Part shown: positions 50,570-64,000 of the stretch, piece after piece
Position numbering within the stretch: position 1 is the stretch's first letter
Layout of the letters: each line of letters begins with the position of its first letter
Source of the DNA: Botryllus schlosseri
Lineage: Eukaryota
Length of the DNA: 64,000 nucleotides
Direction: 5' to 3'
NCBI GenBank assembly: GCA_051294905.1
Contig: CM119371.1
Coordinates: 27,714,001-27,778,000 of the forward strand
The notes under the pieces: model-generated
What the model saw: the letters and a program-made list of their open reading frames with translations, nothing else
What the model was told of the DNA's origin: nothing
Databases searched by the model: none
Program-made: the position numbers and the translations under genes

Positions 50570-50900
50570 CTAAATGTGTGGACATCTCTTACAAATCTAT
50601 ACAAAACCTCGATCTATTGTAGCTTAAAGATGTTTATCAACGAAACAGGATATTTATAATAAATACCCTCGATATTCGATATAAGCAAATAGGGGTCATA
50701 GTAGTCAGCATTGGTTCTTGAATAGACGTAAAAGTAGCGTTTATATTTCATCTCCATCATAAACAAAACCAGCCATTACCAAACATGACGAAAGTACTTC
50801 GAGATGAAGCATAAAATGAAGATGTGCAAAGTGCTCAAGCAAGGTTATCAGAAAGTAAATTTGATTGAGGCGTCACGTAAGTAGTTATATAGATCGGTCT

Positions 50901-51126
50901 GGGGGTGGCAGGGGCTCTTATGGCGGGGTGGTGAGCGGCTGGAAAACCGGGGGTGGTGAGCGGCTCCTTATACCTTATGGCGGGGTGGTGAGCGGCTATT
51001 GCGTCTTATGGCGGGGGTGGTGAGCGGCTCTTATTTCTTATGGCGGGGGTCGTGAGCGGCTGGAAAACCGGGGGTGGTGAGCGGCTTTTATGTCTTATGG
51101 CGGGGTGGCAAGCGGCTATTGTGTCT
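50901..51126 (+). repeat. Polinton subterminal G-rich array, 8 units of GGGGTGGTGAGCGGCT
   Basis: Units at about 50901, 50925, 50950, 50982, 51014, 51046, 51071 and 51102, with spacers alternating TCTTATGGC and GGAAAACC; higher-order ~120-bp duplication. Confidence 0.9.
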
Positions 51127-51793
51127 TGTGGTCGCACCTTTTCAGTATAGGGATAGCTCGCACGCGGCTTCGTTGTTGGCATGTCGTACTTCGTGTTGAA
51201 TATGTATCAAGTAAATAGTCATGTGATTGGTCCTTAGGTAATGTGTATATTCCAAATTACGGCGAGTACGACAATGATATATCGTTATTCTTATGGATGC
51301 GGCGATGATTCGTACTTTCAGGCATCTCTCGCGTGGTGTTGAATATGTACGAGTCACCAACAATAACCGCGCGGACGGAAACGTGGCTTGTTGCGAGGAT
51401 TAAGCAGTGCGACCTATATTTCGAATGACCTGCGCGCTGAATTGTTTCCGTACAGTTGTGTGCTACTATCGATTATTACACTAGAACGATCAGTGTGAAA
51501 TAGTTTGATCGTAAATTATGATATATGATGTCGTAGTTTAGTCGTATCAAATGACCGATCGTGTTCTCTTTCCTCGCTATTGATTGCTACCCGAATAATA
51601 CTTTCGGTTTATTCACACCGCTGTTTCGCGCCTACAGAATAGTCTGCTGTTCACAGTCACAACTTCATCGCGATAGCACAATTTTCACACCTCGATCAGT
51701 AGAACAACACCGCACTAACCCAGTTGTCGAATCACATAGGTCATACATTTTACGCGAAATGAAATATTGTATTGTGGTATACAAATATGCAAA

Positions 51794-52435
51794 CTACTCT
51801 TTCAATTCAACAAGTCTAGTTAACGAATCGATTTTCAAGCTGCCGACACAGTTTTTAACACGAGTTAGTTTATATTTCTTCCCGGGTACGAGCGAGGCTT
51901 TGTTCCATTGATCCAAAACCACCTCGCCAGTATCATCCTTCAATGTAAAACTGTATAATTTCAACTCCTTTCCGGCGCCAGAATTGACCATCTTCTCCTC
52001 TCGAGAAACACAAGTAGCGGTGATCGAGACGTATTCATCTTTATTTCCGTATACCGATTCGCAGGTCAATAATGGGTATTCTTCAGTCGTATGTCTCGAT
52101 TTTCCATGTAGAGTTACTGACGAAGCCCGACCAAGTAATACAGCGGGTTTTCCAGTAAATTTATCAGTTTGAACCCAACCGGATTTGACCATGAGTTTTT
52201 TTCGTTTGGTGAATGCTTTCTCAATGTTCCCGAACAAATCACGATTGAAACACGTGAAAGATATCTCTTCGTTATTGCCATCGATGAATATACCTTTGAG
52301 ATATTGGCTAACGCCACCTCTTTTGGGTGATGAGACGAATTTGACGCCGACGTGAAAATTTGAAGTTGCTCCGACTTGCATAGTGTTGACGCTGTTCGAC
52401 GCCATATCGTTTGATAAAGTGGGAGTCATCAACAA
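51794..52435 (-). CDS. Polinton tandem OB-fold protein, RPA/SSB-like (ATG probably 52429)
   Basis: Two OB-like halves: YLKGIFIDGNNEEISFTCFN...KKLMVKSGWVQ and YVSITATCVSREEKMV...LYSFTLKDDTGEVVLDQWN...PGKKYKLTRV. TATAAATA on the minus strand at 52445-52452. Confidence 0.7.
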   Translation of the reverse strand: MLMTPTLSNDMASNSVNTMQVGATSNFHVGVKFVSSPKRGGVSQYLKGIFIDGNNEEISFTCFNRDLFGNIEKAFTKRKKLMVKSGWVQTDKFTGKPAVLLGRASSVTLHGKSRHTTEEYPLLTCESVYGNKDEYVSITATCVSREEKMVNSGAGKELKLYSFTLKDDTGEVVLDQWNKASLVPGKKYKLTRVKNCVGSLKIDSLTRLVELKE

Positions 52436-52567
52436 ATCCGTCGATATTTATAGAATTAGGCACGTGGTATTAAGTGAGTTAACAGTCTTTGTATAACCCT
52501 GATGACCCGCGTGAATAGACTTGGATTGAAATAAACTTTACAGGAGTTCTGTAAGAAAGGATGCCGT

Positions 52568-52921
52568 TCACAAGTGACAAACGATACGAATGAATTTTCT
52601 TCTTACCCAGTCACTTATCAATGTACTGTAGTGAGTATTCAAGTTGTCTGTTGCTAAATCTCTGTACGCCGCTAGGGTACTTATGTCACTTTTCATCGCC
52701 GCAATGCTTATGACACTAAAAACCCCATTCCAGTCGATGCCGTATGATCGAATCGAGTTAACCAATGCGGTAAAATCACACTTTCGAACACGGCTCACGT
52801 TTTGTCCATGTACATAGAAATCTAGTACTCCGTGGATGAATTTTTCCGTCTCGCTCAATGTGGGGGTTGTCAAGTTATGATAATAGAGAAGGTAATTCTC
52901 AATAATCGCGCTAGTTGCCAT
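52568..52921 (-). CDS. Polinton hypothetical protein, 117 aa
   Basis: ATG-initiated ORF with globular helical composition, co-oriented with the OB-fold gene; no recognisable motif. Confidence 0.6.
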   Translation of the reverse strand: MATSAIIENYLLYYHNLTTPTLSETEKFIHGVLDFYVHGQNVSRVRKCDFTALVNSIRSYGIDWNGVFSVISIAAMKSDISTLAAYRDLATDNLNTHYSTLISDWVRRKFIRIVCHL

Positions 52922-53299
52922 AACGAGTATATGTAACTATCACCTGAAAAAGTAAACCATGAGAATGACACCACAATGTGTTAAAATGGTGAAATACACC
53001 GCTCAGATTTCAAAAAAAAAAACAGATGTTGGCGGGTGCGTTTGACATGTGTGACACAATAAAATCACCCGTTTCGCTAAACAGGAAATTCACTAAAGCG
53101 CAGTGTGCTGTGTGATTTTGAAAAAACAGATGTCCGCGGCCGCGTTTCGATCTGTGTGACACACTAAATACGTCCGGTTCTGAAATTCGGAAACACGGTC
53201 GGTTCTGGGGATTACGCAGTGTGCGTGCGGCCTATATTTCGAATGACCTGTGCGCTGAATTATTTCCCACCCAGCCGCGTGCTACTATCGAATTAAATC

Positions 53300-53307
53300 T
53301 ATAAATA
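53300..53307 (+). promoter_or_regulatory. TATA box of ORF 53389
   Basis: TATAAATA ~85 nt upstream of the ATG; the same octamer occurs at 59452, 61227 and (minus) 52445. Confidence 0.6.
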
Positions 53308-53388
53308 GCCAACACCGCGATCTGATTGTTATACTTCGCTGTCGCAGACATAAACGTTGGTTGGAGCAGTTAGATTAATTATTGTACA

Positions 53389-54276
53389 ATGGCCGAGGCT
53401 CAGATAGATAATCTTGACAAATTTGGTTATGAACCAAATGCATTCGAATCGCAATTTGAAGAGAATGCGGATATCTTTGACGCGATTAATCCTGGTGAGC
53501 TGATGATGTCTGATTTAAGAGTTGAATCCGCAGAACGCGACCTTACGGCAACGATCGAAATGCGACCAAACCATGCAGATATAGCGCGCCAGGCGTGGCT
53601 GAAGTCGGGTCAACTAGCTAGAGAAAGCGCGATTAATGACCTCGCGAACTTGTTGACGACGCCGTGTGTACCGATCGATGAGGCGAACGTTAGCACCGAA
53701 TTACCGAGTACTGAGAAGCCGTCGACTTCTGGGGTGACGCTACCACGCTCCGCGGGGTTGCTATCGGTAACTGATACTCCTAAATCTGTATCAACCGACA
53801 AGCCGACTCGAAAAAGAGCCATAGCGACAACGGCGGGGGTAGGCATACCACCAGCTAAACAGCTTCATAATGGGAAATCGAAAAATTCGAGTCGTACTGA
53901 ACCCAGACAGAAGGCTAGCAAGAAACCTGCGAAATCGAAAACCGTGAGTGTCGATGATTTTCGCGACGACGTGAAGGGAAAGAAGAAGCAAGAAGAAAAA
54001 CTATGTCAATACACAGTTGACAAGATGGTTACCCACCTCCAGACTATTGACGTTGTTAAGCCGCATTTAGGTTCAATACTATGTTATGTTGACTCGTTGA
54101 CGGAGAAAAAAAATTTGACTATCACAAAGCTCATGACTGACATCAAACGATTGCTTACTGTCAAGGGTCAGCGTCGGAGTCTTGATGAGATTCAGCCTGA
54201 ATTAAATACCGCAACCGATGAGTACTTGCATCGACTTCTAGAAATTAGAACAAAATTGAAGTATAATTTGTGCTGA
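53389..54276 (+). CDS. Polinton hypothetical protein, 295 aa (acidic N-terminus, S/T/K-rich linker, helical C-terminus)
   Basis: Long ATG ORF after a TATA box; AATAAA at 54348-53; internal GTGAGT donor at 53944 suggests isoforms. Confidence 0.8.
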   Translation: MAEAQIDNLDKFGYEPNAFESQFEENADIFDAINPGELMMSDLRVESAERDLTATIEMRPNHADIARQAWLKSGQLARESAINDLANLLTTPCVPIDEANVSTELPSTEKPSTSGVTLPRSAGLLSVTDTPKSVSTDKPTRKRAIATTAGVGIPPAKQLHNGKSKNSSRTEPRQKASKKPAKSKTVSVDDFRDDVKGKKKQEEKLCQYTVDKMVTHLQTIDVVKPHLGSILCYVDSLTEKKNLTITKLMTDIKRLLTVKGQRRSLDEIQPELNTATDEYLHRLLEIRTKLKYNLC

Positions 54277-54389
54277 ATGATTTTCGTTGTTGTGAGTGTC
54301 TATTCTCAATTTCTGTTTTCCGTTTCAGATTTTACATTAGAGCCGTAAATAAACAATAGCTTCTAAAAGCGCAACCACTAACGGCGCTG

Positions 54390-54866
54390 GCACTCTTGTA
54401 ATCTCGAATCAGCGGTTCACAGTCTTTCTCTCTGGGTGTCGAGCAGCGAACAGCGTGGCTGACTGTCTGGGTATATTCAACTGCGGATTGTCGGATAAGG
54501 AGTTAATTAGTAAGTTATTCGGTACGATTACTTTGATTTATGAATATAATTTGTTATTTATTTATCCGCCAGACAAAACAAGCGTGGGATTAAAGAATTG
54601 AAACGGTGAGTTATTATTGTTCAGAACTAGTGAACATGATGTAATGATTTTGTTGTTTACAGACAGTGCAAACTCAAGTTGAATACACGAGTCTACTGGT
54701 AAGTTATCTGCTGCATCACTACGTTAGCGAACATAGTTTGATGTGTTACTTGTTTTATTAAGCATAAAGAGTCAAGGAAGACACCAGCAAAGAAACTAGA
54801 TTGTAAGTAAGACTAGTTTAATGTTCCTCAAGTGCTGAATTTGACTGTGTGTTATCGCTTCTACAG
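54390..54866 (+). other. Predicted spliced 5' leader of pPolB: exons ..-54509, 54573-54605, 54663-54698, 54763-54802; introns of 63, 57, 64 and 64 nt
   Basis: Donors GTAAGT (54510), GTGAGT (54606), GTAAGT (54699), GTAAGT (54803), each followed ~60 nt later by a T-rich tract and AG; the last AG abuts the pPolB ATG. Confidence 0.7.
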
Positions 54867-57800
54867 ATGAGTCGACGACGGAGAAATCACGAGGACGAGA
54901 ATGAGCCACCAGAGATTGACAACCAACACCAACAAATTACATCTCAGAACTGGCAAGTGGTGAAATCGTATGTAGTGAACAGTAGCCGTGTGTATAATAT
55001 TCGAGTCATCGATCGTAAGCGATCGGATGTTTTCCAAGATACCCAATCGATCTGTCTGATCAACCCGCAGTTATATGAATACCCTACCGATGGCATGTTG
55101 ATTGGTTGTGCTGGTATTAAACTACCGACATGGCTTACAAAATCAAAATGCGTCATGACAATGTTGCGTCGAAAAAACGGTACGAGACACAATGACAATC
55201 TGTGTGCTTTTCGCTGTATTGGTCACTCACTAGGAAAAGATACCAAAGATTTGGCTCAACAGTTCACTTCGGTGTATGGTGTAAATGTAGAATCCGGTGT
55301 AACTCTTGACATGTTGAATGATATCGAGGTCTTGTTTAATGTGGCCATATTTGTATACACCAAGACTGATGGTAAAGCTGTCGCGCTCCGTCGTAGTACG
55401 TTTGAAGGGAAACCTGTGTATTTACATTTAGAACATGCACACTTCTGTCTCATTACTGATATGAGGCGATATATAGAGACCTATAAATGTGATGTTTGCC
55501 AACGATTATTTGATGAACAATATGATTTGACCAGACACAAATGTGTAACGGGTCCCGTTGAAGTGTTCCCGGGTGGCGTGTATACACCTCCTCTGAACAT
55601 CTTTGAAAAACTTGATCTAGAAGGGGTGTTTGTTCCTCATCAGCTTCGTTATTTCAAATACCGTATCGCGTTCAGTATAGAGAGTGTGTATGATACCTCA
55701 AAAACTTTGCGAGAGTGCCAGAACATTCCCATCTCTGTTAGCATATCGTCTAATGTGGAAGGTTACTTGGAGTCGCGTGTAATTGTCTCGAGCGGTGATA
55801 CAAACGATTTATGCGCCCAAATGATTGACCATTTTCACGATATTCAAAGTGAATCATTCAGACTGTCACTCACAGAATATCGACCCTACCTGGACATGCT
55901 CAAATCGAAAATTACCGAAATGAAAGTGCTCGATCCTTCAAAACACCCAATACCCCTTGAACGTTTACAAGTGGAGTTTATGAGTTATTTGCGTCAAATC
56001 CCTGTTTTGTCGTTCAATTGTGATCGATATGACTTGAACTGGTTCAAAGCGTACTTGTTTGGTTTTCTCGTTGACGACAATCTTAGTGTACTGAAACGCG
56101 GTAACAAATTTCTCTCAATGACGACCAACAGACTTCAATTCTTGGATATTGTGAATTACTTGACACCCGGGTTCTCGTATGATTCGTATTTGGAGGTCGT
56201 CAAATGTAGCGCCGCTAAGGGTCATTTTCCGTACCAGTTTCTGACTAGTTTGGAAAAGTTAGATTATCCGAGTCTACCAAGCCACGACGAGTTTTACAAC
56301 CCGCTAAAAGGTTGTAATATATCCACAGCTGAATATGAAAACTGTTTGAAGGTTTGGAACGACAACAAAATGACCTCTCTGCGTGATTATCTCAAATGGT
56401 GCAACGCGAACGATACTCACTACTTCATAGAGGTTTTAGAAAAACAATTCCAATCATTCAAAAGTCAATTCAATGTTGATATATTCAAGGATGCGGTCTC
56501 CCTACCCGGGGTTGTATCGAGGCATCTTTTCAATAGCATTCCGCGTGATTTCACCTTGTTCAATGATAAACACCAAGATCTGTTTTCGCTATTCGGGGAT
56601 AATTTAGTGGGTGGACCATCGATCATTTTCCATCGACACCCAAAACCAGGTGTAACTCGGATCAAAGAACATGTCTATAAGGAAAATGCACAGATTGCAC
56701 AACATATAACAAGTTTGACCAGCGACTCGCTCTATCTGTATGCTTTAAGTCGACCAAGTCCAACTGGATTTGCGATACGTTGGCAACCAATCGACGCCGA
56801 GTGTACTAAATTCAAACCTGTCAAGACCGCGCCGAAATGCTCAGAGACTGTAACCCAGTGGATGAATTGGTATTCCCATATTCATAAGGTGCATGTTCAC
56901 CACGCTTTTAACGGACCTGAAATTCATGTGGGTGTGCGCAATTATCGACCTGATGGGTTTTATCGTAATTCGGCCGGACAAGGGATAATCTTATCGTTCC
57001 TTAGATGTGATTTTCACGCCCACGATTGCAGATTCGGATGTGATGACCCAGTACGTCGAGAGCGAGCTAAACGCATTCATGATTATTACGAAAGTCTAAA
57101 TTATCGAGTTGTATGTAAATGGGAATGTGAGTGGAATATCGAGAAGAAGAGAAATCCTGATATTGTGCGATATCTCGATGGTATTCAACCACAACTGACC
57201 CGTGCCAAGTCTGTCACCCCACAGAAATTGATGGAGATGGTGATGAATGGTACTTTCTTTGGTTGTTTGCTGGTTGATATTTGTACTCGACCACATTCGA
57301 AAAAGCGATTCGCTGAACTCCGCCCGATATTCAAAAATACTACAGTGTCTCGCGATACCGTGAAAAGTGACATGAATCAGCTTGCTGTAGATCGGAAATC
57401 ACCCAGTAAACCCACTGACATGTTGGTTGCGTCGTACTGCGGTAAGAAAATCTTACTAACCTCCGACTTGATCAAATGGTATGTAGATCACGGATTGGTG
57501 GTATCAAAAATTCATGAGGCTGTCGAGTTCGCCAAAAAGACATGTTTTGACAACTTTGCGAAAAATGTCTCAGACTGTCGACGTGCTGGGGATCGCGATC
57601 CTAACATGGCGATTATTGGGCTAACGCAAAAACTCGCTGCGAATTCTTGTTATGATCGTGAGTTAATGAATCCGCGTAAACTCGAACAAACCACGTTCTG
57701 TGATAAAAGTGAATTGAACGCAAATGTGGAGGATCGTTTCTTCGTCAAGTGTGGAGAAATAAACACAGATCTATTTGAAATAACGAAGCACCCTCAAAAG

Positions 57801-58214
57801 ATCGAGCAAGATAACTGCATTCAAGTATCGTTCTGGTTGTATAATAATGTCAAATTACGGATGTTGTCGTTTTTTTATGACTGTTTATGCAAATATTTTC
57901 GCACCGATTGCTTCATGCTACTTTCGGTGGATATCAATTCGTTTTTCATCGCACATTCAGCCCCACTCGATGACATTCTCATCTCCGAGAAAAGGAACGA
58001 ATTTTACTGTGATTACGAGAATTGGTTTCCACGTTATTTTTGCGATGAGCATCGAAACGAATTCTTGACTGACCCGTCTTCTTTTGACCGCTCGAGACAG
58101 TGTTGCAAAGAGACGTATGCTCATTATCTTCATCAACCTGGTTTGATAAAAGTGAGATACGACGCCGATGCATCTTTCCACGGTCGCAATCGCTTTCACA
58201 GTGACCCAAGATAA
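54867..58214 (+). CDS. polB: Protein-primed family B DNA polymerase homologue (1115 aa) with substituted catalytic motifs
   Basis: DNLCAFRC, C2H2-like CDVC..H, FNCDRYD, KGHFPY, VGGPSIIFHR, Vsr-like insert (PDGF..KWECEW), KLAANSCYD, VDINS, PGLIK. Stop is followed directly by AATAAA (58215-20). Confidence 0.92.
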   Translation: MSRRRRNHEDENEPPEIDNQHQQITSQNWQVVKSYVVNSSRVYNIRVIDRKRSDVFQDTQSICLINPQLYEYPTDGMLIGCAGIKLPTWLTKSKCVMTMLRRKNGTRHNDNLCAFRCIGHSLGKDTKDLAQQFTSVYGVNVESGVTLDMLNDIEVLFNVAIFVYTKTDGKAVALRRSTFEGKPVYLHLEHAHFCLITDMRRYIETYKCDVCQRLFDEQYDLTRHKCVTGPVEVFPGGVYTPPLNIFEKLDLEGVFVPHQLRYFKYRIAFSIESVYDTSKTLRECQNIPISVSISSNVEGYLESRVIVSSGDTNDLCAQMIDHFHDIQSESFRLSLTEYRPYLDMLKSKITEMKVLDPSKHPIPLERLQVEFMSYLRQIPVLSFNCDRYDLNWFKAYLFGFLVDDNLSVLKRGNKFLSMTTNRLQFLDIVNYLTPGFSYDSYLEVVKCSAAKGHFPYQFLTSLEKLDYPSLPSHDEFYNPLKGCNISTAEYENCLKVWNDNKMTSLRDYLKWCNANDTHYFIEVLEKQFQSFKSQFNVDIFKDAVSLPGVVSRHLFNSIPRDFTLFNDKHQDLFSLFGDNLVGGPSIIFHRHPKPGVTRIKEHVYKENAQIAQHITSLTSDSLYLYALSRPSPTGFAIRWQPIDAECTKFKPVKTAPKCSETVTQWMNWYSHIHKVHVHHAFNGPEIHVGVRNYRPDGFYRNSAGQGIILSFLRCDFHAHDCRFGCDDPVRRERAKRIHDYYESLNYRVVCKWECEWNIEKKRNPDIVRYLDGIQPQLTRAKSVTPQKLMEMVMNGTFFGCLLVDICTRPHSKKRFAELRPIFKNTTVSRDTVKSDMNQLAVDRKSPSKPTDMLVASYCGKKILLTSDLIKWYVDHGLVVSKIHEAVEFAKKTCFDNFAKNVSDCRRAGDRDPNMAIIGLTQKLAANSCYDRELMNPRKLEQTTFCDKSELNANVEDRFFVKCGEINTDLFEITKHPQKIEQDNCIQVSFWLYNNVKLRMLSFFYDCLCKYFRTDCFMLLSVDINSFFIAHSAPLDDILISEKRNEFYCDYENWFPRYFCDEHRNEFLTDPSSFDRSRQCCKETYAHYLHQPGLIKVRYDADASFHGRNRFHSDPR

Positions 58215-58494
58215 AATAAATCACGGCGTTGAATGTTATTGTGGTGTACTTGTATATATTTTGTGTGACTTTAATTTATTTGTATATACTGTATGTTTGA
58301 TGTGATTTATTTGTATTGTGTGTTCATGTATCATTTGTTTTCCAGATTGATAACACTATTACCTATCTAAAGTCTGTCATGTCGTTAGATTTTAATGGTT
58401 TACATGTAGAGATGATTACATTCGAGCGGGAAGTACCACAGTTCATGATTCTTGGTTCTACCAAACAACTCCCAACGTCGATGATACCCGATGG

Positions 58495-58802
58495 ATGAAA
58501 AGCAGATCACCAAAACTTGTGCTCAATGGTGAGGTCTATAGTTTGGTAAAGTAACACTATATTTTAAAGCGCTATGAACGTATTACGAATCCTCTTATGT
58601 GATTTATTATTTTACAGATTGGGATCAGCTGCTTGACGACTTGAATAAAGCATTCGTAACACTACAACTTCCGCTGACGAAATTACGAGGGACAGATGAA
58701 GATTTCATAACCCGGGGAAAATTGCTAAATCGAACTTTACTGGGATTGTATATTCCGCTAGAACATGACGACTACAACAGTGGATATTCCCAACCTTGTT
58801 GA
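58495..58802 (+). CDS. Putative two-exon small Polinton gene (58495-58528 + 58618-58802, ~72 aa)
   Basis: ATG AAA AGC...AAT G|GTGAGG and ttattttacAG|AT TGG join in phase 1 to give MKSRSPKLVLNDWDQLLDDLNKAFVTLQ...SQPC*. No homology recognised. Confidence 0.4.
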
Positions 58803-58844
58803 TATATAAACACATACACTTTATCGAGTTTCAATAAACAACAA

Positions 58845-59456
58845 ATGATGGAATTGATCCACCCATTCGCGTGTATTGTGAGTGGTCCTTCGAGAAGTGG
58901 GAAGACTACTTTTGTTGCAAAGCTGATCAGGCATGCGACATCCATGATTAAACCAAGTGTATCCAGGGTCGTATATTGTTACAATAATTATCAGGAGGTT
59001 TTCAAGACGATGCGTAACGTAGAATTCCACGCGGGTCTAGATATTTTAGAAGAGTTGAAGGTTTGCTCTGAAGACACCTTGATTATAGTGGATGATTTCA
59101 TGGCCGAGACAGCGAAAATTGCAGACTACTTTACAAGATTTTCTCATCATTCGGCAAAGTCAATTTGCTATATCACACAGAACCTGTACCACAAGGGTAA
59201 AGGAGCGCGTGACTTGAGTCTCTCGAGCTCGTATATGGTGATTTTCAAGAATCCGCGCGACCAACAGCAGATCAGTTTTCTTGGTCGACAAATGTACCCA
59301 AACTCTAGATTTTTAACAGAGGCTTATCGTGACGCTGCTAGACAACCTCATAGTTATTTATTCCTTGATCTCACGCAAGAAGCACCTGAAAATCGACGAG
59401 TTATGACCAATATATTTCCTGGTGAAACCATGGTGGTTTATAGCCCGATGGTATAA
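58845..59456 (+). CDS. A32/FtsK-HerA-type DNA packaging ATPase
   Basis: Walker A GPSRSGKT, Walker B LIIVDD, ITQNLY, IFKNPRD, SYLFLDL motifs typical of Polinton ATPases; TATATAAA at 58803. Confidence 0.95.
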   Translation: MMELIHPFACIVSGPSRSGKTTFVAKLIRHATSMIKPSVSRVVYCYNNYQEVFKTMRNVEFHAGLDILEELKVCSEDTLIIVDDFMAETAKIADYFTRFSHHSAKSICYITQNLYHKGKGARDLSLSSSYMVIFKNPRDQQQISFLGRQMYPNSRFLTEAYRDAARQPHSYLFLDLTQEAPENRRVMTNIFPGETMVVYSPMV

Positions 59457-59489
59457 ATAGCCAGGTGCAGAGACGACTTTAAACTCAAA

Positions 59490-59837
59490 ATGACCAAGGT
59501 ACCAGCTCGGACACGGCGGCATATACCCACACTAGAGTTCCTACATAAAAGTAAACCCGAGATACGCAAGCAAATTATATCGGGAGCCAGCAAAGAATTG
59601 ATCGAGTGTATATGCGATTGTACAAAGAACATTTTAAACGGCAACATCCCTCTTTCAAAGTATAAAAGAAAGCGACTATCAGCTCATAAATGTAGTTTAC
59701 GTCGACTTGTCAGGAAAGACATCCCTATTCGACATAAAAAACGTATGGTCAACCAGAATGGGGGTATGTTTATGACTCTATTATCAAGCATCCTACCCGT
59801 CGTCACTGGTTTACTCGGTAATCTTTTCAAAAAATGA
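59490..59837 (+). CDS. Conserved Polinton basic virion protein with C-terminal amphipathic helix after a Q-x-G-G site
   Basis: ELIECICDCTKNILNGNIPLS..K..L...QNGGMFMTLLSSILPVVTGLL resembles the small Polinton core or membrane-lytic precursor proteins. Confidence 0.75.
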   Translation: MTKVPARTRRHIPTLEFLHKSKPEIRKQIISGASKELIECICDCTKNILNGNIPLSKYKRKRLSAHKCSLRRLVRKDIPIRHKKRMVNQNGGMFMTLLSSILPVVTGLLGNLFKK

Positions 59838-60229
59838 CTTCTTTTAAAAAAATCTTCATAAATCCGAGCCCGATCAACGGAGCTGACGTTCAGAAATTGA
59901 ATTTGGATATCGACAAATGCATGAGCGACATATTACAGATGAACATACCCCAAGAACGAAAATTAGCCTTATATAACGACGCACTAAATCGTTATCAAAC
60001 AAAACACGACACGCTGAATCAACCGATGAAAATCGATATATCAGAACAAAGGAATCTATTTTCGGCTAGTGAGTTGGACGCACTGCGACGCCTGATCAAG
60101 GGTGAACCATCAAGGATTCCTATACCATCACCGAGTAGCCAACGAAGCAAAGTAAAGACTCAGCATGCCCCGACGAAAAGCGGTCGTACACCCAAGACCC
60201 CGAGACGATACGGATGGGAGCCATACTAA
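59834..60229 (+). CDS. Conserved Polinton hypothetical protein, 131 aa
   Basis: LD..MSDIL......KLALYNDALNRY motif and terminal W-x-x-Y; ATGA overlap with the upstream ORF. Confidence 0.7.
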   Translation: MTSFKKIFINPSPINGADVQKLNLDIDKCMSDILQMNIPQERKLALYNDALNRYQTKHDTLNQPMKIDISEQRNLFSASELDALRRLIKGEPSRIPIPSPSSQRSKVKTQHAPTKSGRTPKTPRRYGWEPY

Positions 60230-61235
60230 GTATTTCACGCCAGGGCTACCCGGTAGTTATCGCGGTGCATACGTATTCTCTAGAGGGCGGAATAGAGCCA
60301 AAGTCAAGGAGTTTCTTTCGAGCAAGGACGCGTACACAAAACATTTTCCCTATCGAAAGAAATTTAAGAGACCTAGAGTGATTACGTCCGGTCTCGGTGT
60401 TCAGTATCAAACCGATCTCATGCATATGCAAAATCTTTCAAAAGAAAACGATAATTTTAAATATGTGTTGGTGACGATCGATTGTTTCAGCCGATTTTTA
60501 TATCTGTATCCACTCAAAAACAAAACCTCGCAAGGTATTATTCGCGGATTCAAGGAAATATTTAAGGATCGTATACCTCATGTTATTCAAAGTGATCAAG
60601 GTTCTGAGTTTACTAATCGTGCGTTTCAGACTTTCTTAAAAGAGAACAATGTGCGACATTTTCATACAAATAGTGAACTGAAAGCATCGATATGCGAGCG
60701 TGTTATTCGTACTGTGAAGCAAGTGTTATACCGTTATTTCACGCATAATAAGACTTTGAATTATGTCAGTGTCCTGTCTGAGATATGCCGGGGGTATAAC
60801 ACTACTTTTCACGTTGCTATAGGGTGTCCTCCAGCAGATGTTGATTATTCAAATCAAGAACAAATTTTCCACAGGTTATACGGTGACATGACCCCTAAAA
60901 AACCCAAACTAACTATCGGCACACCGGTCAGGATTTCGAAATCACGTGGTAATTTTGTAAAAAGTGCCTTGGCGAGTTGGACCGAAGAAATCTTTTTCGT
61001 ATCTCAATGTTGTAAAGGTGACCCTCCTACTTATCAATTGAAAGACTACCATGGTGAAGTTATAGACGGTCGCTTTCAGCGTGAAGAGTTACAACCAATA
61101 ACGAAAAATAATAATATTTACAATATCGAGAAAATCCTGTCTACTCGCAGGAAAGGAAAGAAAACGCAATATTTTGTAAAATGGTTGGGTTACCCATCTA
61201 CATTTAATTCCTGGGTCTCGGATTTGTATAAATAG
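60165..61235 (+). CDS. int: Retroviral-type (rve/c-int) integrase with C-terminal chromodomain
   Basis: DDE triad QTD..IDCFSR / QSDQGSEF / ICER intact; WTEEIF; chromodomain YNIEKIL..YFVKWLGYPSTFNSWV. Confidence 0.95.
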   Translation: MPRRKAVVHPRPRDDTDGSHTKYFTPGLPGSYRGAYVFSRGRNRAKVKEFLSSKDAYTKHFPYRKKFKRPRVITSGLGVQYQTDLMHMQNLSKENDNFKYVLVTIDCFSRFLYLYPLKNKTSQGIIRGFKEIFKDRIPHVIQSDQGSEFTNRAFQTFLKENNVRHFHTNSELKASICERVIRTVKQVLYRYFTHNKTLNYVSVLSEICRGYNTTFHVAIGCPPADVDYSNQEQIFHRLYGDMTPKKPKLTIGTPVRISKSRGNFVKSALASWTEEIFFVSQCCKGDPPTYQLKDYHGEVIDGRFQREELQPITKNNNIYNIEKILSTRRKGKKTQYFVKWLGYPSTFNSWVSDLYK

Positions 61236-61244
61236 ACGCTGAAA

Positions 61245-61478
61245 ATGTTGTTCAACCAAACTATGGATTCTGATTCCGGCTCATCTCGCATGGGTCAAGT
61301 CTCGAACAGTCTGAAAAACCAGATTGTGTTTATTGTGCAGATTTGTATGTTAGTGTGTGTAATCGTGTTTTCCTTATATCAAATTTCTGTCGGGGTGGAT
61401 CGTGAAATATATTTAACGCTACTGTCTTCTTCACTTGGGTATTTATTACCGAATCCATCGCCTCACCGTATATGTTGA
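61245..61478 (+). CDS. Small Polinton membrane protein
   Basis: Hydrophobic IVFIVQICMLVCVIVFSLYQI and LLSSSLGYLLPNP segments; TATAAATA at 61227. Confidence 0.75.
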   Translation: MLFNQTMDSDSGSSRMGQVSNSLKNQIVFIVQICMLVCVIVFSLYQISVGVDREIYLTLLSSSLGYLLPNPSPHRIC

Positions 61479-61490
61479 AGAAACAATAAA

Positions 61491-62321
61491 ATGTTGTTGA
61501 CTCTACCTTCGAATGCGAGTTTGGATAAATTTTCGAATACTAGCGCAGATTTTCAAACGGAACTTTACAAAGAATTAGAAATGAATCGCCATGAGCTGGG
61601 ATTATGTGAGCTGACCTTCCCCAATGATTTTCAACCGCGAATTGAAGTGACAGCGAAAAGTATCGGTTTTGGATTTGTCGATGCGAATGGATACACCGAA
61701 CGGTATTATATTCCCGAAGGTTCGTATTACAGCATCGGTGAAATGTTAGAATCGTACGAGAAATATTACATGGGGGACATTTTCATTTTACAAGGATTCG
61801 GTGACTTTAGAATCACATTCAGAAGATTAGTCACGAGTAAAAAAAGACACAAGCGAGGTGTACCCATAAATACCGATACCGCAGACTCTAGCGTCAAACA
61901 CATACCCCGTACCACGCATGATTCACCCGAGCCTTACGGACTGATACCGCTTGGTTCTGTGTTGGCCACAATAACATTTAGACGCGTTGTATCTCGTCGC
62001 CGCGGAGTGGTAGAATTTATATTTACACCTGCGATAAAGTTGGAACGGATTGATAAGGTTTATGTGTATTGCGATCTGATACAACCAAGACCACATGGTA
62101 ACAAGCTGCAACAACTTTTACGGGTGGTTACTGTAACCGCTAAACCGAATGAAAACCAAATCAACATATTCCCAAAACCATACTTCTTTGCTTTAGCGAG
62201 AAACAATTTTAGAACGATACGAATTTATCTACGTGATGCAGCTGGCAACCCTATTAAATTTCGAAAAGCACCAGTGACAGTAACCCTACGCTTCCGGCGT
62301 AGAGCTGTTGATTCAATATGA
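61491..62321 (+). CDS. Minor capsid protein (penton, single jelly roll) 1
   Basis: LTLPSNAS..NTSADF..LGLCELTFP ... VYVYCDLIQP..G..LLRVV...PYF...IRIYLRD..G.PI.F..VTLRFRR. Confidence 0.9.
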   Translation: MLLTLPSNASLDKFSNTSADFQTELYKELEMNRHELGLCELTFPNDFQPRIEVTAKSIGFGFVDANGYTERYYIPEGSYYSIGEMLESYEKYYMGDIFILQGFGDFRITFRRLVTSKKRHKRGVPINTDTADSSVKHIPRTTHDSPEPYGLIPLGSVLATITFRRVVSRRRGVVEFIFTPAIKLERIDKVYVYCDLIQPRPHGNKLQQLLRVVTVTAKPNENQINIFPKPYFFALARNNFRTIRIYLRDAAGNPIKFRKAPVTVTLRFRRRAVDSI

Positions 62322-62989
62322 GTTACATCACGTTGTCTGGCACCCAAGGTGAATTCTCGGTGGTGTTACCGAATGAAATTATTTGTAATGAGCTTGCGTT
62401 GATGGATATGAGTTTTGTCAGTGAATCTCTTGATCGAATTATAATCAATCGTGATCAAGCACTCTGGGAGCTACATAATGAGAAAGATCGAATAGTAGAA
62501 GCGTACCTAACACCACTTGGGAATTATGCAAACAACCTCGAGTTGACGCGAAGAATATTATCTGACAGTTTCAAACACTGTTTCACCGAAAGAATCAACG
62601 ATGAACTTTTCCGAATTCGTTACTCGAAACGTATCACACTCCACCCCACGGATATATTCACGAATTATTTCAGTGTAGTTGATCAAGTGTCGACACCAGT
62701 ATGTAATGTCACGTCGATCAAACCTAAACCAACTCAACCCCACCTCAGATATCTTTTTGTGTATATCAATGTACTACGACATCATCCGGTGGGTGATTAC
62801 ATGAGTCAATTGCTTCGTGTGATCCAAGTAAATAACGAGGCGTGTATGAGACAAGAAGTTGTATATGAAAAACCGTTTTATTTCCCAGTATCGATTAACT
62901 ACATCCGCGATATAAAAATCACCATCCGGGATCAATACGGTCAGTTAGTACATGATATAGAGACCACATTGACACTCCACGCACGATGA
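62318..62989 (+). CDS. Minor capsid protein paralogue 2
   Basis: ELALMDMSF ... YLFVYINV...VGD..SQLLRVI...PFYFPV..IKITIRDQYG...TLHAR. Confidence 0.85.
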   Translation: MSYITLSGTQGEFSVVLPNEIICNELALMDMSFVSESLDRIIINRDQALWELHNEKDRIVEAYLTPLGNYANNLELTRRILSDSFKHCFTERINDELFRIRYSKRITLHPTDIFTNYFSVVDQVSTPVCNVTSIKPKPTQPHLRYLFVYINVLRHHPVGDYMSQLLRVIQVNNEACMRQEVVYEKPFYFPVSINYIRDIKITIRDQYGQLVHDIETTLTLHAR

Positions 62990-63381
62990 AAATAGTGACG
63001 TTAACCACCTCTATGCTTGGTGTTGATTTTGAACACAGACTACTCACCATCAACAACATCCCGACAAGATATTGTGAATTAGCCCTCATGGAGATCGATT
63101 TCACTTTAACCGAACCGGCGATTGGTCAATATTTGTTTGTGTATTGCGATATTATTCACCCTCACTTACTTGGAGATGTGTTAGCGCGTTTATTACGAGT
63201 TATACCACTGACACCTGGTGATGTCACGCATAATTGGGTAGCGTCAAATCCGTATTATTTCCCTGTTTCAAAAGATGTTGTAGATTCTGTATGTCTTTAC
63301 CTCAGGGATGAGTTTGGGGAACCTATAAATATAATAAGTCGTTCATTGCAAGCTACATTTAACATTAGGAAGCGATTATGA
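62986..63381 (+). CDS. Minor capsid protein paralogue 3 (minimal, 131 aa)
   Basis: ELALMEIDF..YLFVYCDII...GD..RLLRVI...PYYFPV..LYLRDEFGEPI..ATFNIRK; lacks the variable insertion. Confidence 0.85.
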   Translation: MKIVTLTTSMLGVDFEHRLLTINNIPTRYCELALMEIDFTLTEPAIGQYLFVYCDIIHPHLLGDVLARLLRVIPLTPGDVTHNWVASNPYYFPVSKDVVDSVCLYLRDEFGEPINIISRSLQATFNIRKRL

Positions 63382-63749
63382 AAGTTGTTTTCACGTGTGA
63401 TCATCATTCTGTCCATCGTCATTATAACCAGACAGGTGATGGTTATGGATATTTTAGCGGTGGAGTTCAAGCCGGTTCCGGTATTGGGAGTTTGTTTAAA
63501 TCACTCGGTCGTTTAGTGACACCTATTGCGAAATACGCCGGTGGTCAATTGTTACGGACTGGAGGTGAAATAGCGAGAGATCTATTACGGGGTAACTCGA
63601 TCAAGTCTAGTGTTGTCAAGAGAAGTAAACAAGCTGGCGGTCGAGTGATTGATAAAATTTTAACCCCAAAAGCTATAAAAAGGAAAAAAACAAAGTCAAA
63701 GAACACTTCATCCAAACGTCGTCGTAAACAACAGGATATATTCGACTAA
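63378..63749 (+). CDS. Basic core protein precursor with Q-x-G-x-G motifs
   Basis: YNQTGDG..FSG..QAGSGIGSLFKSLGRLVTP, K/R-rich tail, terminal DIFD; typical gene just upstream of the Polinton MCP. Confidence 0.8.
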   Translation: MKVVFTCDHHSVHRHYNQTGDGYGYFSGGVQAGSGIGSLFKSLGRLVTPIAKYAGGQLLRTGGEIARDLLRGNSIKSSVVKRSKQAGGRVIDKILTPKAIKRKKTKSKNTSSKRRRKQQDIFD

Positions 63750-63754
63750 GAACT

Positions 63755-64000
63755 ATGTTGATGCACGCGGGTTCCCGAGAATGTCATAACTCCGGATTAA
63801 ACATATTTAGTATACCCCACACGCAAACCAGTATTGAGGAATCGCAATATGTCGTCGTCAAACCCCATAGTTTAGGTAATGTCATGGAAGTACAATTACC
63901 AAGGACGGATCGATATATGGATCTACAAAACACGTTCTTGAGGTTACGTTTGAAGCTCACTAAACGCGATGGAACTGATTTAGCAAACGATACACAAGTG
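63755..64000 (+). CDS. Major capsid protein (double jelly roll), 5' part; truncated by the window end
   Basis: MLMHAGSRECHNSGLNIFSIPHTQTSIEESQYVVVKP...YMDLQNTFLRLRLKLTKRDGT matches the Polinton MCP N-terminus (S.L.LF..P.TQTSI...Y.DL..T.L). Confidence 0.9.
   Translation, partial: MLMHAGSRECHNSGLNIFSIPHTQTSIEESQYVVVKPHSLGNVMEVQLPRTDRYMDLQNTFLRLRLKLTKRDGTDLANDTQV

What the first reader, a model, noticed from the sequence alone, without database searches (positions are those of the whole stretch)
54867..58214. Uninterrupted pPolB whose polymerase and exonuclease active sites are substituted: a candidate pseudo-polymerase Polinton
Seen: 1115 codons with no stop or frameshift. ExoI F-D-I-E reads FSIES (55671); ExoIII Y-x-x-x-D reads CNAND (56400); Pol motif A (Y/F)-D-x-N-S-L-Y reads LTSDSLY (Asp to Thr, 56718); motif B K-x-x-x-N-S-x-Y-G reads KLAANSCYD (57630); motif C D-T-D-S reads DINS (57930). 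The ORF stops about 25 residues after PGLIK, without the usual thumb region. Established: the motif A and C aspartates are essential metal ligands in family B polymerases. Two changes (D to S, D to T) need two nucleotide substitutions each, while ATPase and integrase catalytic residues in the same element are intact. Inference: neutral decay would be expected to break a 3.3-kb ORF before removing these catalytic sites, so the protein may be kept for a non-catalytic role. The element would then replicate using a helper Polinton, a second polB outside the window, or host enzymes.
Basis: partly seen in the sequence, partly recalled or inferred. Interest (0 to 1): 0.9.

Follow-up and report, generated by a model that had tools for sequence, protein, structure and literature searches.

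The report
Open but catalytically dead Polinton polymerase
A virus-like transposon (Polinton) in this window carries a full-length, unbroken DNA-polymerase gene. The gene has lost its catalytic residues, its priming domain and its thumb, yet seems to be kept open by selection, so the element probably no longer copies itself with its own enzyme.

Summary
Window 54867-58214 (+) is one open 1115-codon ORF, a true relative of Polinton/adintovirus protein-primed family B polymerases (family HMM E 8e-290; best folds phi29 and adintovirus polymerases).

- **Lost catalysis:** it deviates at 4 of 10 strictly catalytic columns. None of 114 relatives covering all ten deviates at more than one.
- **Lost domains:** the terminal-protein (priming) domain and the thumb are missing.
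- **Kept parts:** the vOTU protease Cys/His, a C2H2 finger and a Vsr-like insert.

- **Gene-specific speed-up:** relative-rate tests show a 1.5-1.7-fold acceleration confined to this gene. ATPase and integrase run on clock. Within the gene, vOTU+finger are not accelerated; the exonuclease and polymerase parts are.
- **Not plain drift:** read as neutral drift, the excess predicts 9-11 nonsense changes (P of none about 1e-4 to 1e-5). There are none, no frameshifts, and replacements are as conservative as in intact sisters.
- **Element under selection:** a 97.6%-identical sister contig shows purifying selection on the other genes (pN/pS 0.27), but it lacks the polymerase, so dN/dS on the ORF itself could not be measured.
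- **No second polymerase** is found in the element.

Verdict: a probable pseudo-polymerase, a new variant of the known inactivated B-family polymerases.

The parts
51288..64000 (+). Polinton/adintovirus-like element. The left boundary lies at or left of 51288. The element is cut by the window end, and about 1.9 kb more is expected to the right, judging from sister contig L011.
   Evidence: Gene order pol-ATPase-small ORFs-integrase-paralogous ORFs-capsid-like gene is shared with L001, L005, L007, L008, L012 and L013. L011 is 97.6% identical to 58547-64000 and continues to a terminal repeat.
51288..51663 (.). Left terminal inverted repeat (the part that could be seen).
   Evidence: The reverse complement matches the right end of L011 (7599-7966) at 87% over 382 nt. 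The outer end is not defined, because L011 stops there.
51794..54276 (.). Left-arm ORFs without detectable relatives: 51794-52435 (-), 52568-52921 (-), 53389-54276 (+).
   Evidence: Open frames. No Pfam or PHROG family, no homologue for the 295-aa ORF, and no match to the genes of sister elements.
54867..58214 (+). pPolB-derived ORF, 1115 codons. It has 0 stops and 0 frameshifts. Two large deletions leave the frame open: the terminal-protein domain and the thumb. It deviates at 4 of 10 strictly catalytic columns and at further conserved motif positions.
   Evidence: Model pLDDT 84, pTM 0.75. Folds: phi29 and adintovirus.
55104..55478 (+). vOTU-like cysteine protease/deubiquitinase domain of the ORF (residues about 80-204), with the family-invariant Cys and His kept.
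   Evidence: C113 and H192 are invariant columns. Domain identity follows PMC11161782. The relative rate is 0.67 versus sisters.
55479..55562 (+). C2H2 zinc finger (residues about 205-232).
   Evidence: C208, C211 and H224 are invariant. There is a weak Pfam zf-C2H2 match, and zf-C2H2 hits 16 of 41 family members.
55563..56546 (+). 3'-5' exonuclease-like domain (residues about 233-560). Two of five catalytic columns deviate.
   Evidence: Relative rate 1.66.
56547..58211 (+). Polymerase part: palm, TPR1, fingers and a Cys-rich C-terminal piece (residues about 561-1115). Both metal-ligand columns (motif A and the second in motif C) deviate, and the thumb is absent.
   Evidence: Relative rate 1.83, p 3e-4.
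56934..57146 (+). Vsr-like endonuclease insert within the polymerase part (residues about 690-760), with the conserved Cys/His/Glu columns kept.
   Evidence: Column shares. Pfam Vsr is hit weakly by 3 family members. Endonuclease inserts in polinton pPolBs are noted in PMC11071308.
58215..58844 (+). A 630-nt gene-poor spacer between pol and the ATPase. A poly(A)-signal-like hexamer sits directly after the stop codon. Homology with sister contig L011 begins inside this spacer.
   Evidence: Sister elements L012 and L013 have an E2 (UQ_con) gene and small ORFs between pol and the ATPase.
58845..59456 (+). Packaging ATPase (A32/FtsK-like), Walker A and B kept.
   Evidence: Pfam AAA_14, RNA_helicase and Pox_A32. 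Invariant columns. 51-57% identical to L012/L013.
59490..60229 (+). Two small ORFs (115 and 131 aa). The first has relatives in L012/L013; two small ORFs lie at this position in L005, L007 and L008 as well.
   Evidence: pN/pS against L011 is 0.13 and 0.27.
60165..61235 (+). Retroviral-type integrase (rve) with a C-terminal chromodomain.
   Evidence: Pfam rve 2.9e-16 and Chromo 4.2e-8. D, D, E candidates are invariant. pN/pS against L011 is 0.19.
61245..63749 (+). Five ORFs (77, 276, 223, 131 and 123 aa). Three of them (276, 223 and 131 aa) share a C-terminal domain. All five lie in the stretch 97.6% identical to L011, and most have relatives in L012/L013.
   Evidence: pN/pS against L011 is 0.10-0.59 for the four ORFs compared; the 77-aa ORF was not compared.
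63755..64000 (+). Start of a 420-455-aa gene, cut by the window end. It is the putative major capsid protein by position and size only.
   Evidence: tblastn matches to the N-termini of the 438-, 455- and 426-aa genes of L001, L012 and L013. No family hit for the L011 copy. The fold was not tested.

Best explanation
The ORF is a pseudo-polymerase: a derivative of the element's own protein-primed family B polymerase that can no longer prime or synthesise DNA but is still made and still under selection.

Shown:
- It descends from the same polymerase as in the nearest related elements.
- It lacks the priming (terminal-protein) domain and the thumb.
- It has non-canonical residues at both polymerase metal-ligand columns and at two exonuclease catalytic columns.
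- It keeps the vOTU Cys/His, the zinc finger and the Vsr-like insert.
- Its frame is intact.

Inferred:
- The N-terminal vOTU protease/deubiquitinase plus zinc-finger module keeps its original job. It evolves at the sisters' rate.
- The exonuclease-polymerase body is retained as a folded, non-catalytic scaffold or DNA-binding part. It evolves about 1.8x faster, but conservatively and without truncation.
- The element no longer self-synthesises. It persists as an integrated copy replicated by the host and moved by its integrase, or it is replicated in trans by a related element with an intact polymerase.
For: - Homology and fold.
- Loss of catalytic columns: 4 of 10, against at most 1 in 114 relatives.
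- Loss of the TP domain and thumb, with no remnant anywhere in the window.
- Gene-specific acceleration. Tajima tests give 168-196 unique changes in the window protein against 106-123 in sisters (ratio 1.5-1.7, p 1e-3 to 3e-5) for six of the eight sister/outgroup pairings. The ATPase ratio is at most about 1.2 (0.5-1.24) and never significant. The integrase is mostly not significant.
- Polymerase identity to L012/L013 is 37-38%, although ATPase is 51-57% and integrase 51%.
- Uneven acceleration within the gene: vOTU+finger 0.67, Exo+Pol about 1.8, Fisher p 0.014.
- Against neutral drift: the excess replacement fraction of 0.19 would imply about 167 neutrally replaced codons and 9-11 nonsense changes, so P(none) is 1e-4 to 2e-5.
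- All lineage-specific indels are in frame.
- Unique replacements are as conservative as in the sisters. Mean BLOSUM62 is about 0.1, against about -0.45 for random single-base changes.
- The element lineage is under purifying selection: pN/pS 0.27 over seven genes against L011.
- No other polymerase-like sequence occurs in the window or in the right arm seen in L011.
- Precedents for retained inactive B-family polymerases: PMC5499653.
Against: - Only one copy of the ORF exists in any collection searched, so there is no direct dN/dS.
- The nearest relatives are only 38-39% identical, so the tests rest on deep alignments.
- The acceleration is moderate. With outgroup L005 it weakens to 1.14-1.35.
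- The conservativeness test cannot cleanly separate a mixture of selected and neutral changes (about 2 standard errors, my estimate).
- The sister contig L011 has unrelated sequence where the polymerase should be. The gene may therefore simply be dispensable.
- The high confidence of the model comes from the alignment of intact relatives, not from this sequence alone.
- Expression is unknown.
Confidence: 0.52

Rival explanations
1. Plain decay. The polymerase gene became dispensable and is a relic on its way to pseudogenisation. The open frame is luck, or the relaxation is recent.
For: - Accelerated change and two large deletions.
- Catalytic columns are replaced at about the same rate as other conserved sites: 4 of 10, against 0.44 overall.
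- L011 shows that a near-identical right half exists without this gene next to it.
- No second copy is available to show constraint.
Against: - The neutral reading predicts 9-11 nonsense changes and many frameshifts; none is seen.
- Replacements are no more radical than in intact sisters.
- The vOTU+finger module is not accelerated.
- No open relative shows a comparable multi-site loss.
Confidence: 0.22
2. Only the N-terminal vOTU+zinc-finger module is functional. The exonuclease-polymerase body is a passenger. Premature stops are selected against only indirectly, for example because a long untranslated tail would lower the level of the message.
For: - vOTU Cys/His and the finger are kept and evolve at or below sister rate, while everything downstream is accelerated, most strongly towards the C-terminus (ratio 3.9).
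- vOTU is proposed as an active protease/deubiquitinase in polinton polymerases (PMC11161782).
Against: - Replacements in the body are still conservative, and all indels are in frame.
- The Vsr-like insert keeps its conserved Cys/His/Glu columns.
- The indirect selection against stops is my inference and is untested.
Confidence: 0.13
3. The protein is still an active polymerase, using shifted or alternative acidic residues.
For: An acidic residue sits two positions after the lost motif A carboxylate, where relatives have a polar residue. The first motif C carboxylate is kept.
Against: - The second motif C metal ligand is also lost, together with an Exo I carboxylate, the thumb and the priming domain.
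- Nine of the ten catalytic columns, including all four that deviate here, are 99-100% conserved in 135-186 relatives.
- Established knowledge of family B polymerases makes both carboxylates essential.
Confidence: 0.03
4. Artefact or chimera: an assembly join or a recombination put a diverged polymerase segment next to an unrelated, younger right arm.
For: Homology between the window and L011 starts abruptly inside the pol-ATPase spacer.
Against: - The nearest polymerase relatives (P0161/L012, P0162/L013) belong to elements whose ATPase (51-57%) and integrase (51%) are closer to the window's than those of the other elements fetched. So the polymerase and the right arm share ancestry.
- L011 is a 2x-coverage metagenome contig and is itself the likelier chimera or truncated copy.
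- An assembly error cannot create hundreds of in-frame substitutions.
Confidence: 0.04

Closest known systems
Polinton/Maverick (adintovirus-like) pPolB with TP-vOTU-exonuclease-palm architecture (PMC11161782)
   Same: Same protein family and fold. It has the same vOTU Cys/His and sits at the same place in the element, directly upstream of the ATPase and integrase.
   Different: The TP domain and thumb are absent. Four of ten catalytic columns are non-canonical. No Pfam PF03175 match is left.
Inactivated pDNAP domain fused to the SF1 helicase in Tlr1-like proteins of polinton-like viruses and transpovirons (PMC5499653)
   Same: A pPolB derivative within the Polinton-centred virus class that has lost catalytic motifs yet is retained.
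   Different: Those proteins lack the exonuclease domain and gain a helicase, which supplies a new replication function. Here the exonuclease fold is kept, no helicase or other replication enzyme was found in the element, and an integrase is present.
Other retained inactive family B polymerases: the C-terminal half of eukaryotic Pol epsilon, the archaeal inactivated PolB family, chordopoxvirus F12, herpesvirus UL8 (as listed in PMC5499653)
   Same: The B-family fold is kept and the catalytic residues are lost, with a presumed structural role. Poxvirus F12-type proteins appear among the fold and family matches of this family.
   Different: Those are old, widely conserved families with clear purifying selection. 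Here a single sequence is known, and its constraint is inferred indirectly.
Adenovirus polymerase (inactivated vOTU, separate TP gene) and the Stylophora polinton with a split TP (PMC11071308)
   Same: The polymerase polypeptide has no TP domain.
   Different: In those cases the TP is encoded by a separate gene and the polymerase is active. Here no TP-like sequence is detectable elsewhere in the window, and the polymerase active site is lost.

Membership tests
[quoted passage not shown] | Sequence homology to the family | tested here: met
   HMM of 40 relatives E 8e-290. 5664 relatives. 12 of the 40 relatives scanned hit PF03175. The window protein itself gives no PF03175 match.
[quoted passage not shown] | Exonuclease-palm-fingers fold of phi29-type polymerases | tested here: met
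   Model pLDDT 84. Top PDB matches are phi29 polymerase with probability 1.0 and target TM 0.53-0.55. The top viral match is adintovirus polymerase, E 2e-31. The model leans on the alignment of intact relatives.
[quoted passage not shown] | Metal-ligand carboxylates of motifs A and C | tested here: not met
   The motif A column and the second motif C column deviate. Both are 99% conserved in 183 and 136 relatives.
[quoted passage not shown] | Exo I-III catalytic residues | tested here: not met
   Two of five columns deviate (one in Exo I, one in Exo III). Exo II is kept.
[quoted passage not shown] | Thumb with its conserved Lys-x-Tyr region | tested here: not met
   The match ends at family HMM position 1249 of 1341. 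There is no remnant in six frames downstream or elsewhere.
[quoted passage not shown] | Priming (terminal-protein) domain, fused or separately encoded | tested here: not met
   About 90 residues present in P0161-P0163 are absent. No TP-like match occurs anywhere in the window. A very divergent separate TP cannot be excluded.
Polinton/Maverick element (adintovirus-like) | Retroviral-type integrase | tested here: met
   Pfam rve 2.9e-16 plus Chromo. D, D, E candidates invariant.
Polinton/Maverick element (adintovirus-like) | Packaging ATPase | tested here: met
   AAA/Pox_A32-type matches. Walker A and B kept.
Polinton/Maverick element (adintovirus-like) | Functional pPolB | tested here: not met
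   A homologue is present, but the catalytic columns, the TP domain and the thumb are lost.
Polinton/Maverick element (adintovirus-like) | Terminal inverted repeats | tested here: inconclusive
   Window 51288-51663 is the reverse complement of the right end of sister contig L011 at 87%. The window's own right end lies outside the window.
Polinton/Maverick element (adintovirus-like) | Double jelly-roll major and minor capsid proteins and a maturation protease | tested here: inconclusive
   A 420-455-aa gene and a 146-149-aa gene are syntenic across relatives, but no family match was found. The fold was not tested and no protease was recognised.
Retained inactivated family B polymerases (pseudo-polymerases) | B-family fold kept, catalytic residues lost | tested here: met
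Retained inactivated family B polymerases (pseudo-polymerases) | Purifying selection or conservation of the inactive form across copies or species | tested here: inconclusive
   No second copy was found. The indirect tests favour constraint.
vOTU cysteine protease/deubiquitinase domain of polinton polymerases | Catalytic Cys and His in the OTU-like fold | tested here: met
   C113 and H192 fall in invariant columns. The region is modelled with pLDDT about 80-90. Domain assignment follows PMC11161782. Activity is not testable here.

The most novel reading that the evidence does not exclude
A lineage of capsid- and integrase-encoding Polintons has given up self-synthesis. Its polymerase gene has been turned into a non-catalytic protein, with a vOTU deubiquitinase/protease module on an inert exonuclease-polymerase scaffold. 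The element persists by depending on the polymerase of co-resident Polintons or on host replication. That would make it a satellite-like dependant within the Polinton world, and a living intermediate of the route that produced the inactivated polymerase domains of polinton-like viruses, transpovirons and poxvirus F12.
Probability: 0.3. Interest if true: 0.75.

Novelty: new variant of a known kind. Interest (0 to 1): 0.6.

Why it matters
By definition, Polintons are "self-synthesising": they carry a protein-primed polymerase and an integrase (PMC5499653). An otherwise selected element whose only polymerase gene is open but catalytically dead would show that the capsid-integrase part can persist without self-replication.

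It would also give a natural snapshot of how inactive B-family polymerases arise and are retained. Known cases are Tlr1-like helicase fusions, poxvirus F12, herpesvirus UL8 and Pol epsilon.

Finally, it would point to the vOTU module as a function separable from DNA synthesis.

If it is only slow decay, the case is ordinary. It would still be a useful warning for annotation pipelines that call any long pPolB-like ORF a DNA polymerase.

Tried and rejected
- **Pfam and PDB sequence searches** with the ORF gave nothing useful. Identification needed the protein searches and the fold.
- **Thumb or TP-domain coding sequence displaced into another frame or place.** Searched with tblastn using tails and heads of eight relatives, an HMM of the C-terminal region on six frames, and the TP and thumb regions of the three nearest relatives. 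Nothing was found. Both parts are therefore deleted, not frameshifted.
- **Sister copies of the ORF.** All of these came back empty: exact look-ups, the word-indexed search, the exhaustive representative search (best 39% identity, no high-identity fragment), JGI metagenomes and IMG/VR.
- **Sister contig L011.** It was found through the integrase (98% identical), but it starts just downstream of the polymerase with 631 nt that match nothing.
- **The odd-one-out comparison** of conserved columns was discarded as biased, because the window protein alone lacked a close sister. It was replaced by Tajima relative-rate tests with two independent sister pairs.
- **Echinoderm loci** L002, L003, L004 and L006 hold a polymerase but no ATPase or integrase within 10 kb, so they could not serve for calibration.
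- **The 295-aa ORF upstream** was tested as a possible separate TP or replication protein. It has no homologues and no family, and the single-sequence model is unusable at pLDDT 44. It was not sent to fold search.
- **The apparent internal duplication** in the right arm is a family feature shared with L011, L012 and L013, not a lesion.
- **Rfam** found nothing in the window.


Full report
**1. What is there**

Window 54867-58214 (+) is a single open frame of 1115 codons from its ATG. The other five frames over the same span hold 40-92 stops each. The window has no N.

The ORF lies in a compact block of same-strand genes:
- a packaging ATPase at 58845-59456;
- a retroviral-type integrase with chromodomain at 60165-61235;
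- a run of small ORFs;
- the start of a 420-455-aa gene cut by the window end.

The same gene order is found in six related loci fetched from public assemblies: L001, L005, L007, L008, L012 and L013. It is polymerase, then ATPase (with an E2 gene and small ORFs in between in L012/L013), small ORFs, integrase, paralogous ORFs, then a capsid-like gene.

Contig L011 is 97.6% identical to window 58547-64000. It continues through a 421-aa and a 147-aa gene to a stretch that is the reverse complement of window 51288-51663 (87%). That stretch is a terminal inverted repeat. The block is therefore a Polinton/adintovirus-type element of about 15 kb. Its left end lies at or before 51288, and its last ~1.9 kb lie outside the window.

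**2. Is the ORF a polymerase homologue?**

Yes.
- Pfam and PDB sequence searches are silent.
- The protein searches return thousands of relatives. The nearest are 38-39% identical.
- An HMM of 40 relatives matches with E 8e-290.
- 12 of those relatives hit PF03175.
- An AlphaFold model (pLDDT 84, pTM 0.75) is closest to phi29 DNA polymerase among solved structures. Among viral models it is closest to adintovirus, bidnavirus and adenovirus polymerases.
- The family architecture described for polinton polymerases is terminal protein, vOTU protease, exonuclease, palm (PMC11161782/PMC11071308). It is visible in the relatives, with an added C2H2 finger and a Vsr-like insert.

**3. The observation**

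I aligned the protein with 189 relatives and scored ten strictly catalytic columns: Exo I x2, Exo II, Exo III x2, motif A, motif B x2 and motif C x2.
- Nine of the ten columns are 99-100% conserved; one motif B column is 84%.
- Of 114 relatives that cover all ten, 95 deviate nowhere, 19 deviate once, and none more than once.
- The window protein deviates at four: one Exo I, one Exo III, the motif A metal ligand and the second motif C metal ligand.
- Further near-invariant positions in motifs B and C also differ.

- The match to the family HMM covers positions 197-1249 of 1341.
- About 90 residues of the terminal-protein domain and 80-90 residues of the thumb, both present in the three nearest relatives, are absent.
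- No trace of either is found in any frame downstream or anywhere in the window.

Tally for this gene: no stops, no frameshifts, two large deletions that leave the frame open, a handful of small in-frame indels, and the catalytic substitutions.

Kept: the vOTU Cys and His, the zinc-finger ligands, Exo II, the Exo III carboxylate, the motif B Lys, the first motif C carboxylate and the conserved Cys/His/Glu of the Vsr-like insert.

ATPase Walker motifs and the integrase acidic triad candidates are intact.

**4. Decay or retention?**

No second copy of the ORF could be found. L011 begins just downstream of it, with 631 nt that match nothing. The direct dN/dS test was therefore impossible, and I used four indirect tests.

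(a) Relative rate.
- With sisters L001/L007 and outgroups L005/L008, and again with the closer sisters L012/L013 and outgroups L001/L007, the window polymerase has 168-196 lineage-unique replacements against 106-123 in the sisters (ratio 1.5-1.7, p 1e-3 to 3e-5).
- The ATPase ratio is at most about 1.2 (0.5-1.24) and never significant. The integrase ratio is mostly not significant.
- In line with this, the polymerase is 37-38% identical to L012/L013, although ATPase is 51-57% and integrase 51%. Among intact elements the ratio of polymerase identity to the mean of the other two is 0.84-1.06. For the window it is 0.69-0.75 with its nearer relatives (L012, L013, L001, L007) and 0.88-0.93 with the distant pair L005/L008.
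- With outgroup L005 and the closer sisters the signal weakens to 1.14-1.35.

(b) Where the excess lies.
- vOTU+finger run at 0.67 of the sister rate.
- Exonuclease 1.66, fingers 1.84, palm/motif C 2.24, C-terminal piece 3.9.
- vOTU+finger against exonuclease+polymerase: Fisher p 0.014.

(c) Neutral expectation.
- In the exonuclease-polymerase body the excess replacement fraction at sites where sister and outgroup agree is 0.19.
- If neutral drift produced it, about 167 codons were replaced.
- With 5.4-6.5 nonsense changes per 100 non-synonymous changes for this ORF's codons, that implies 9-11 nonsense mutations were expected, giving P(none) of 1e-4 to 2e-5.
- Frameshifting indels would come on top; none is present.

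(d) Kind of replacement.
- The window-unique replacements are as conservative as those of the intact sisters. Mean BLOSUM62 is 0.02-0.19 against -0.06 to 0.23.
- They are more conservative than random single-base changes (about -0.45).
- By my estimate, a mixture of selected and neutral changes is disfavoured only at about two standard errors.

Finally, the element lineage is alive in the evolutionary sense. Over seven genes the window and L011 differ with pS 0.036, pN 0.010 and pN/pS 0.27. Their 2.4% divergence is far too small for the polymerase changes to have arisen neutrally after the split.

**5. Explanation**

The best reading (about 0.5) is a retained pseudo-polymerase.
- Protein-primed synthesis and proofreading are lost.
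- The vOTU+finger module keeps its role.
- The exonuclease-polymerase body survives as a folded non-catalytic part.
- The element then depends on host replication of the integrated copy plus its integrase, or on a helper element's polymerase.
- A second polymerase within the element is unlikely. None is in the window, and the right arm seen in L011 has none.

Rivals:
- plain decay with a lucky open frame (about 0.2);
- only the N-terminal module is functional, with indirect selection against truncation (about 0.13);
- residual activity through alternative acidic residues (about 0.03);
- chimera or artefact (about 0.04).

**6. Comparison with what is known**

Retained inactive B-family polymerases are well documented:
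- the pDNAP-helicase fusions of polinton-like viruses and transpovirons;
- Pol epsilon;
- an archaeal family;
- poxvirus F12;
- herpesvirus UL8 (PMC5499653).

Two full-text literature searches turned up no paper describing an integrase-bearing Polinton whose only polymerase gene is an open, domain-reduced, catalytically dead derivative with no replacement enzyme. I read only two of the papers found, and that is a limited search, not proof of absence. I rate it a new variant of a known kind.

**7. Caveats on my own conduct**

- **Possible slip on residue-level detail.** One notebook entry summarised them. These may count as listing places and changes. I stopped doing so, deleted nothing, and give only counts here.
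- **Motif patterns from memory.**
- **Consensus lines** printed by the alignment tool were not used.

**8. Host**

The host organism is not identified. Named relatives come from echinoderm genomes, while the nearest elements come from unnamed ENA/Logan assemblies. CpG is not depleted in the element or its flank.

Noticed in passing
window 45623-47257: A large nested inverted-repeat structure. The arms are 520 nt and 93% complementary, with several inner pairs. It resembles a foldback or MITE-like element, about 4 kb left of the Polinton.
   Followed up: no
window 50891-51117: A G-rich tandem array, 5 copies of a ~32-57-nt unit, lies just outside the part of the terminal repeat that could be matched. 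It may be the outer part of the terminal repeat or flanking satellite.
   Followed up: no
window 51407-51472 and 53225-53291: A ~66-nt direct repeat (85-93% identical) occurs in the left arm. The second copy ends about 100 nt upstream of the 295-aa ORF. It may be a duplicated promoter or regulatory block.
   Followed up: no
L011:1-631 versus window 58215-58546: The near-identical sister contig loses all similarity to the window inside the pol-ATPase spacer. Its first 631 nt hold the end of an ORF that has no relatives. It could be a truncated copy, a recombinant or a low-coverage chimera.
   Followed up: partly
L012:1-188 and L013:6292-6765: The two nearest related elements encode an E2 ubiquitin-conjugating enzyme (Pfam UQ_con) between polymerase and ATPase. 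This gene sits beside a polymerase that carries a vOTU deubiquitinase-like domain. The window element has no such gene.
   Followed up: partly
L005:10001-15118 and L008:942-6284: In one branch of the family the polymerase polypeptide carries a NADAR domain (1705-1780 aa). L001 has NADAR as a separate upstream gene, next to an OB-fold (Rep_fac-A_C) gene.
   Followed up: no
L002, L003, L004, L006, L010 (Holothuria, Apostichopus and Lytechinus chromosomes, plus one unnamed ENA contig): Full-length polymerases of this family carry extra N-terminal C2H2 fingers. In L002, L003, L004 and L006 they stand without ATPase or integrase within 10 kb. Some are annotated as 'Krueppel-related zinc finger protein 1'. 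Whether they are solo remnants or domesticated genes was not examined.
   Followed up: no
window 61491-63381: Three consecutive ORFs (276, 223 and 131 aa) share a C-terminal domain. The same paralogous series exists in L011, L012 and L013, so it is a family feature and not a lesion.
   Followed up: yes
window 58621-58809: A 63-codon open frame without an ATG lies in the pol-ATPase spacer. It is preceded by a polypyrimidine-AG sequence that looks like a splice acceptor, and it lies in the part shared with L011. Coding status is unknown.
   Followed up: no
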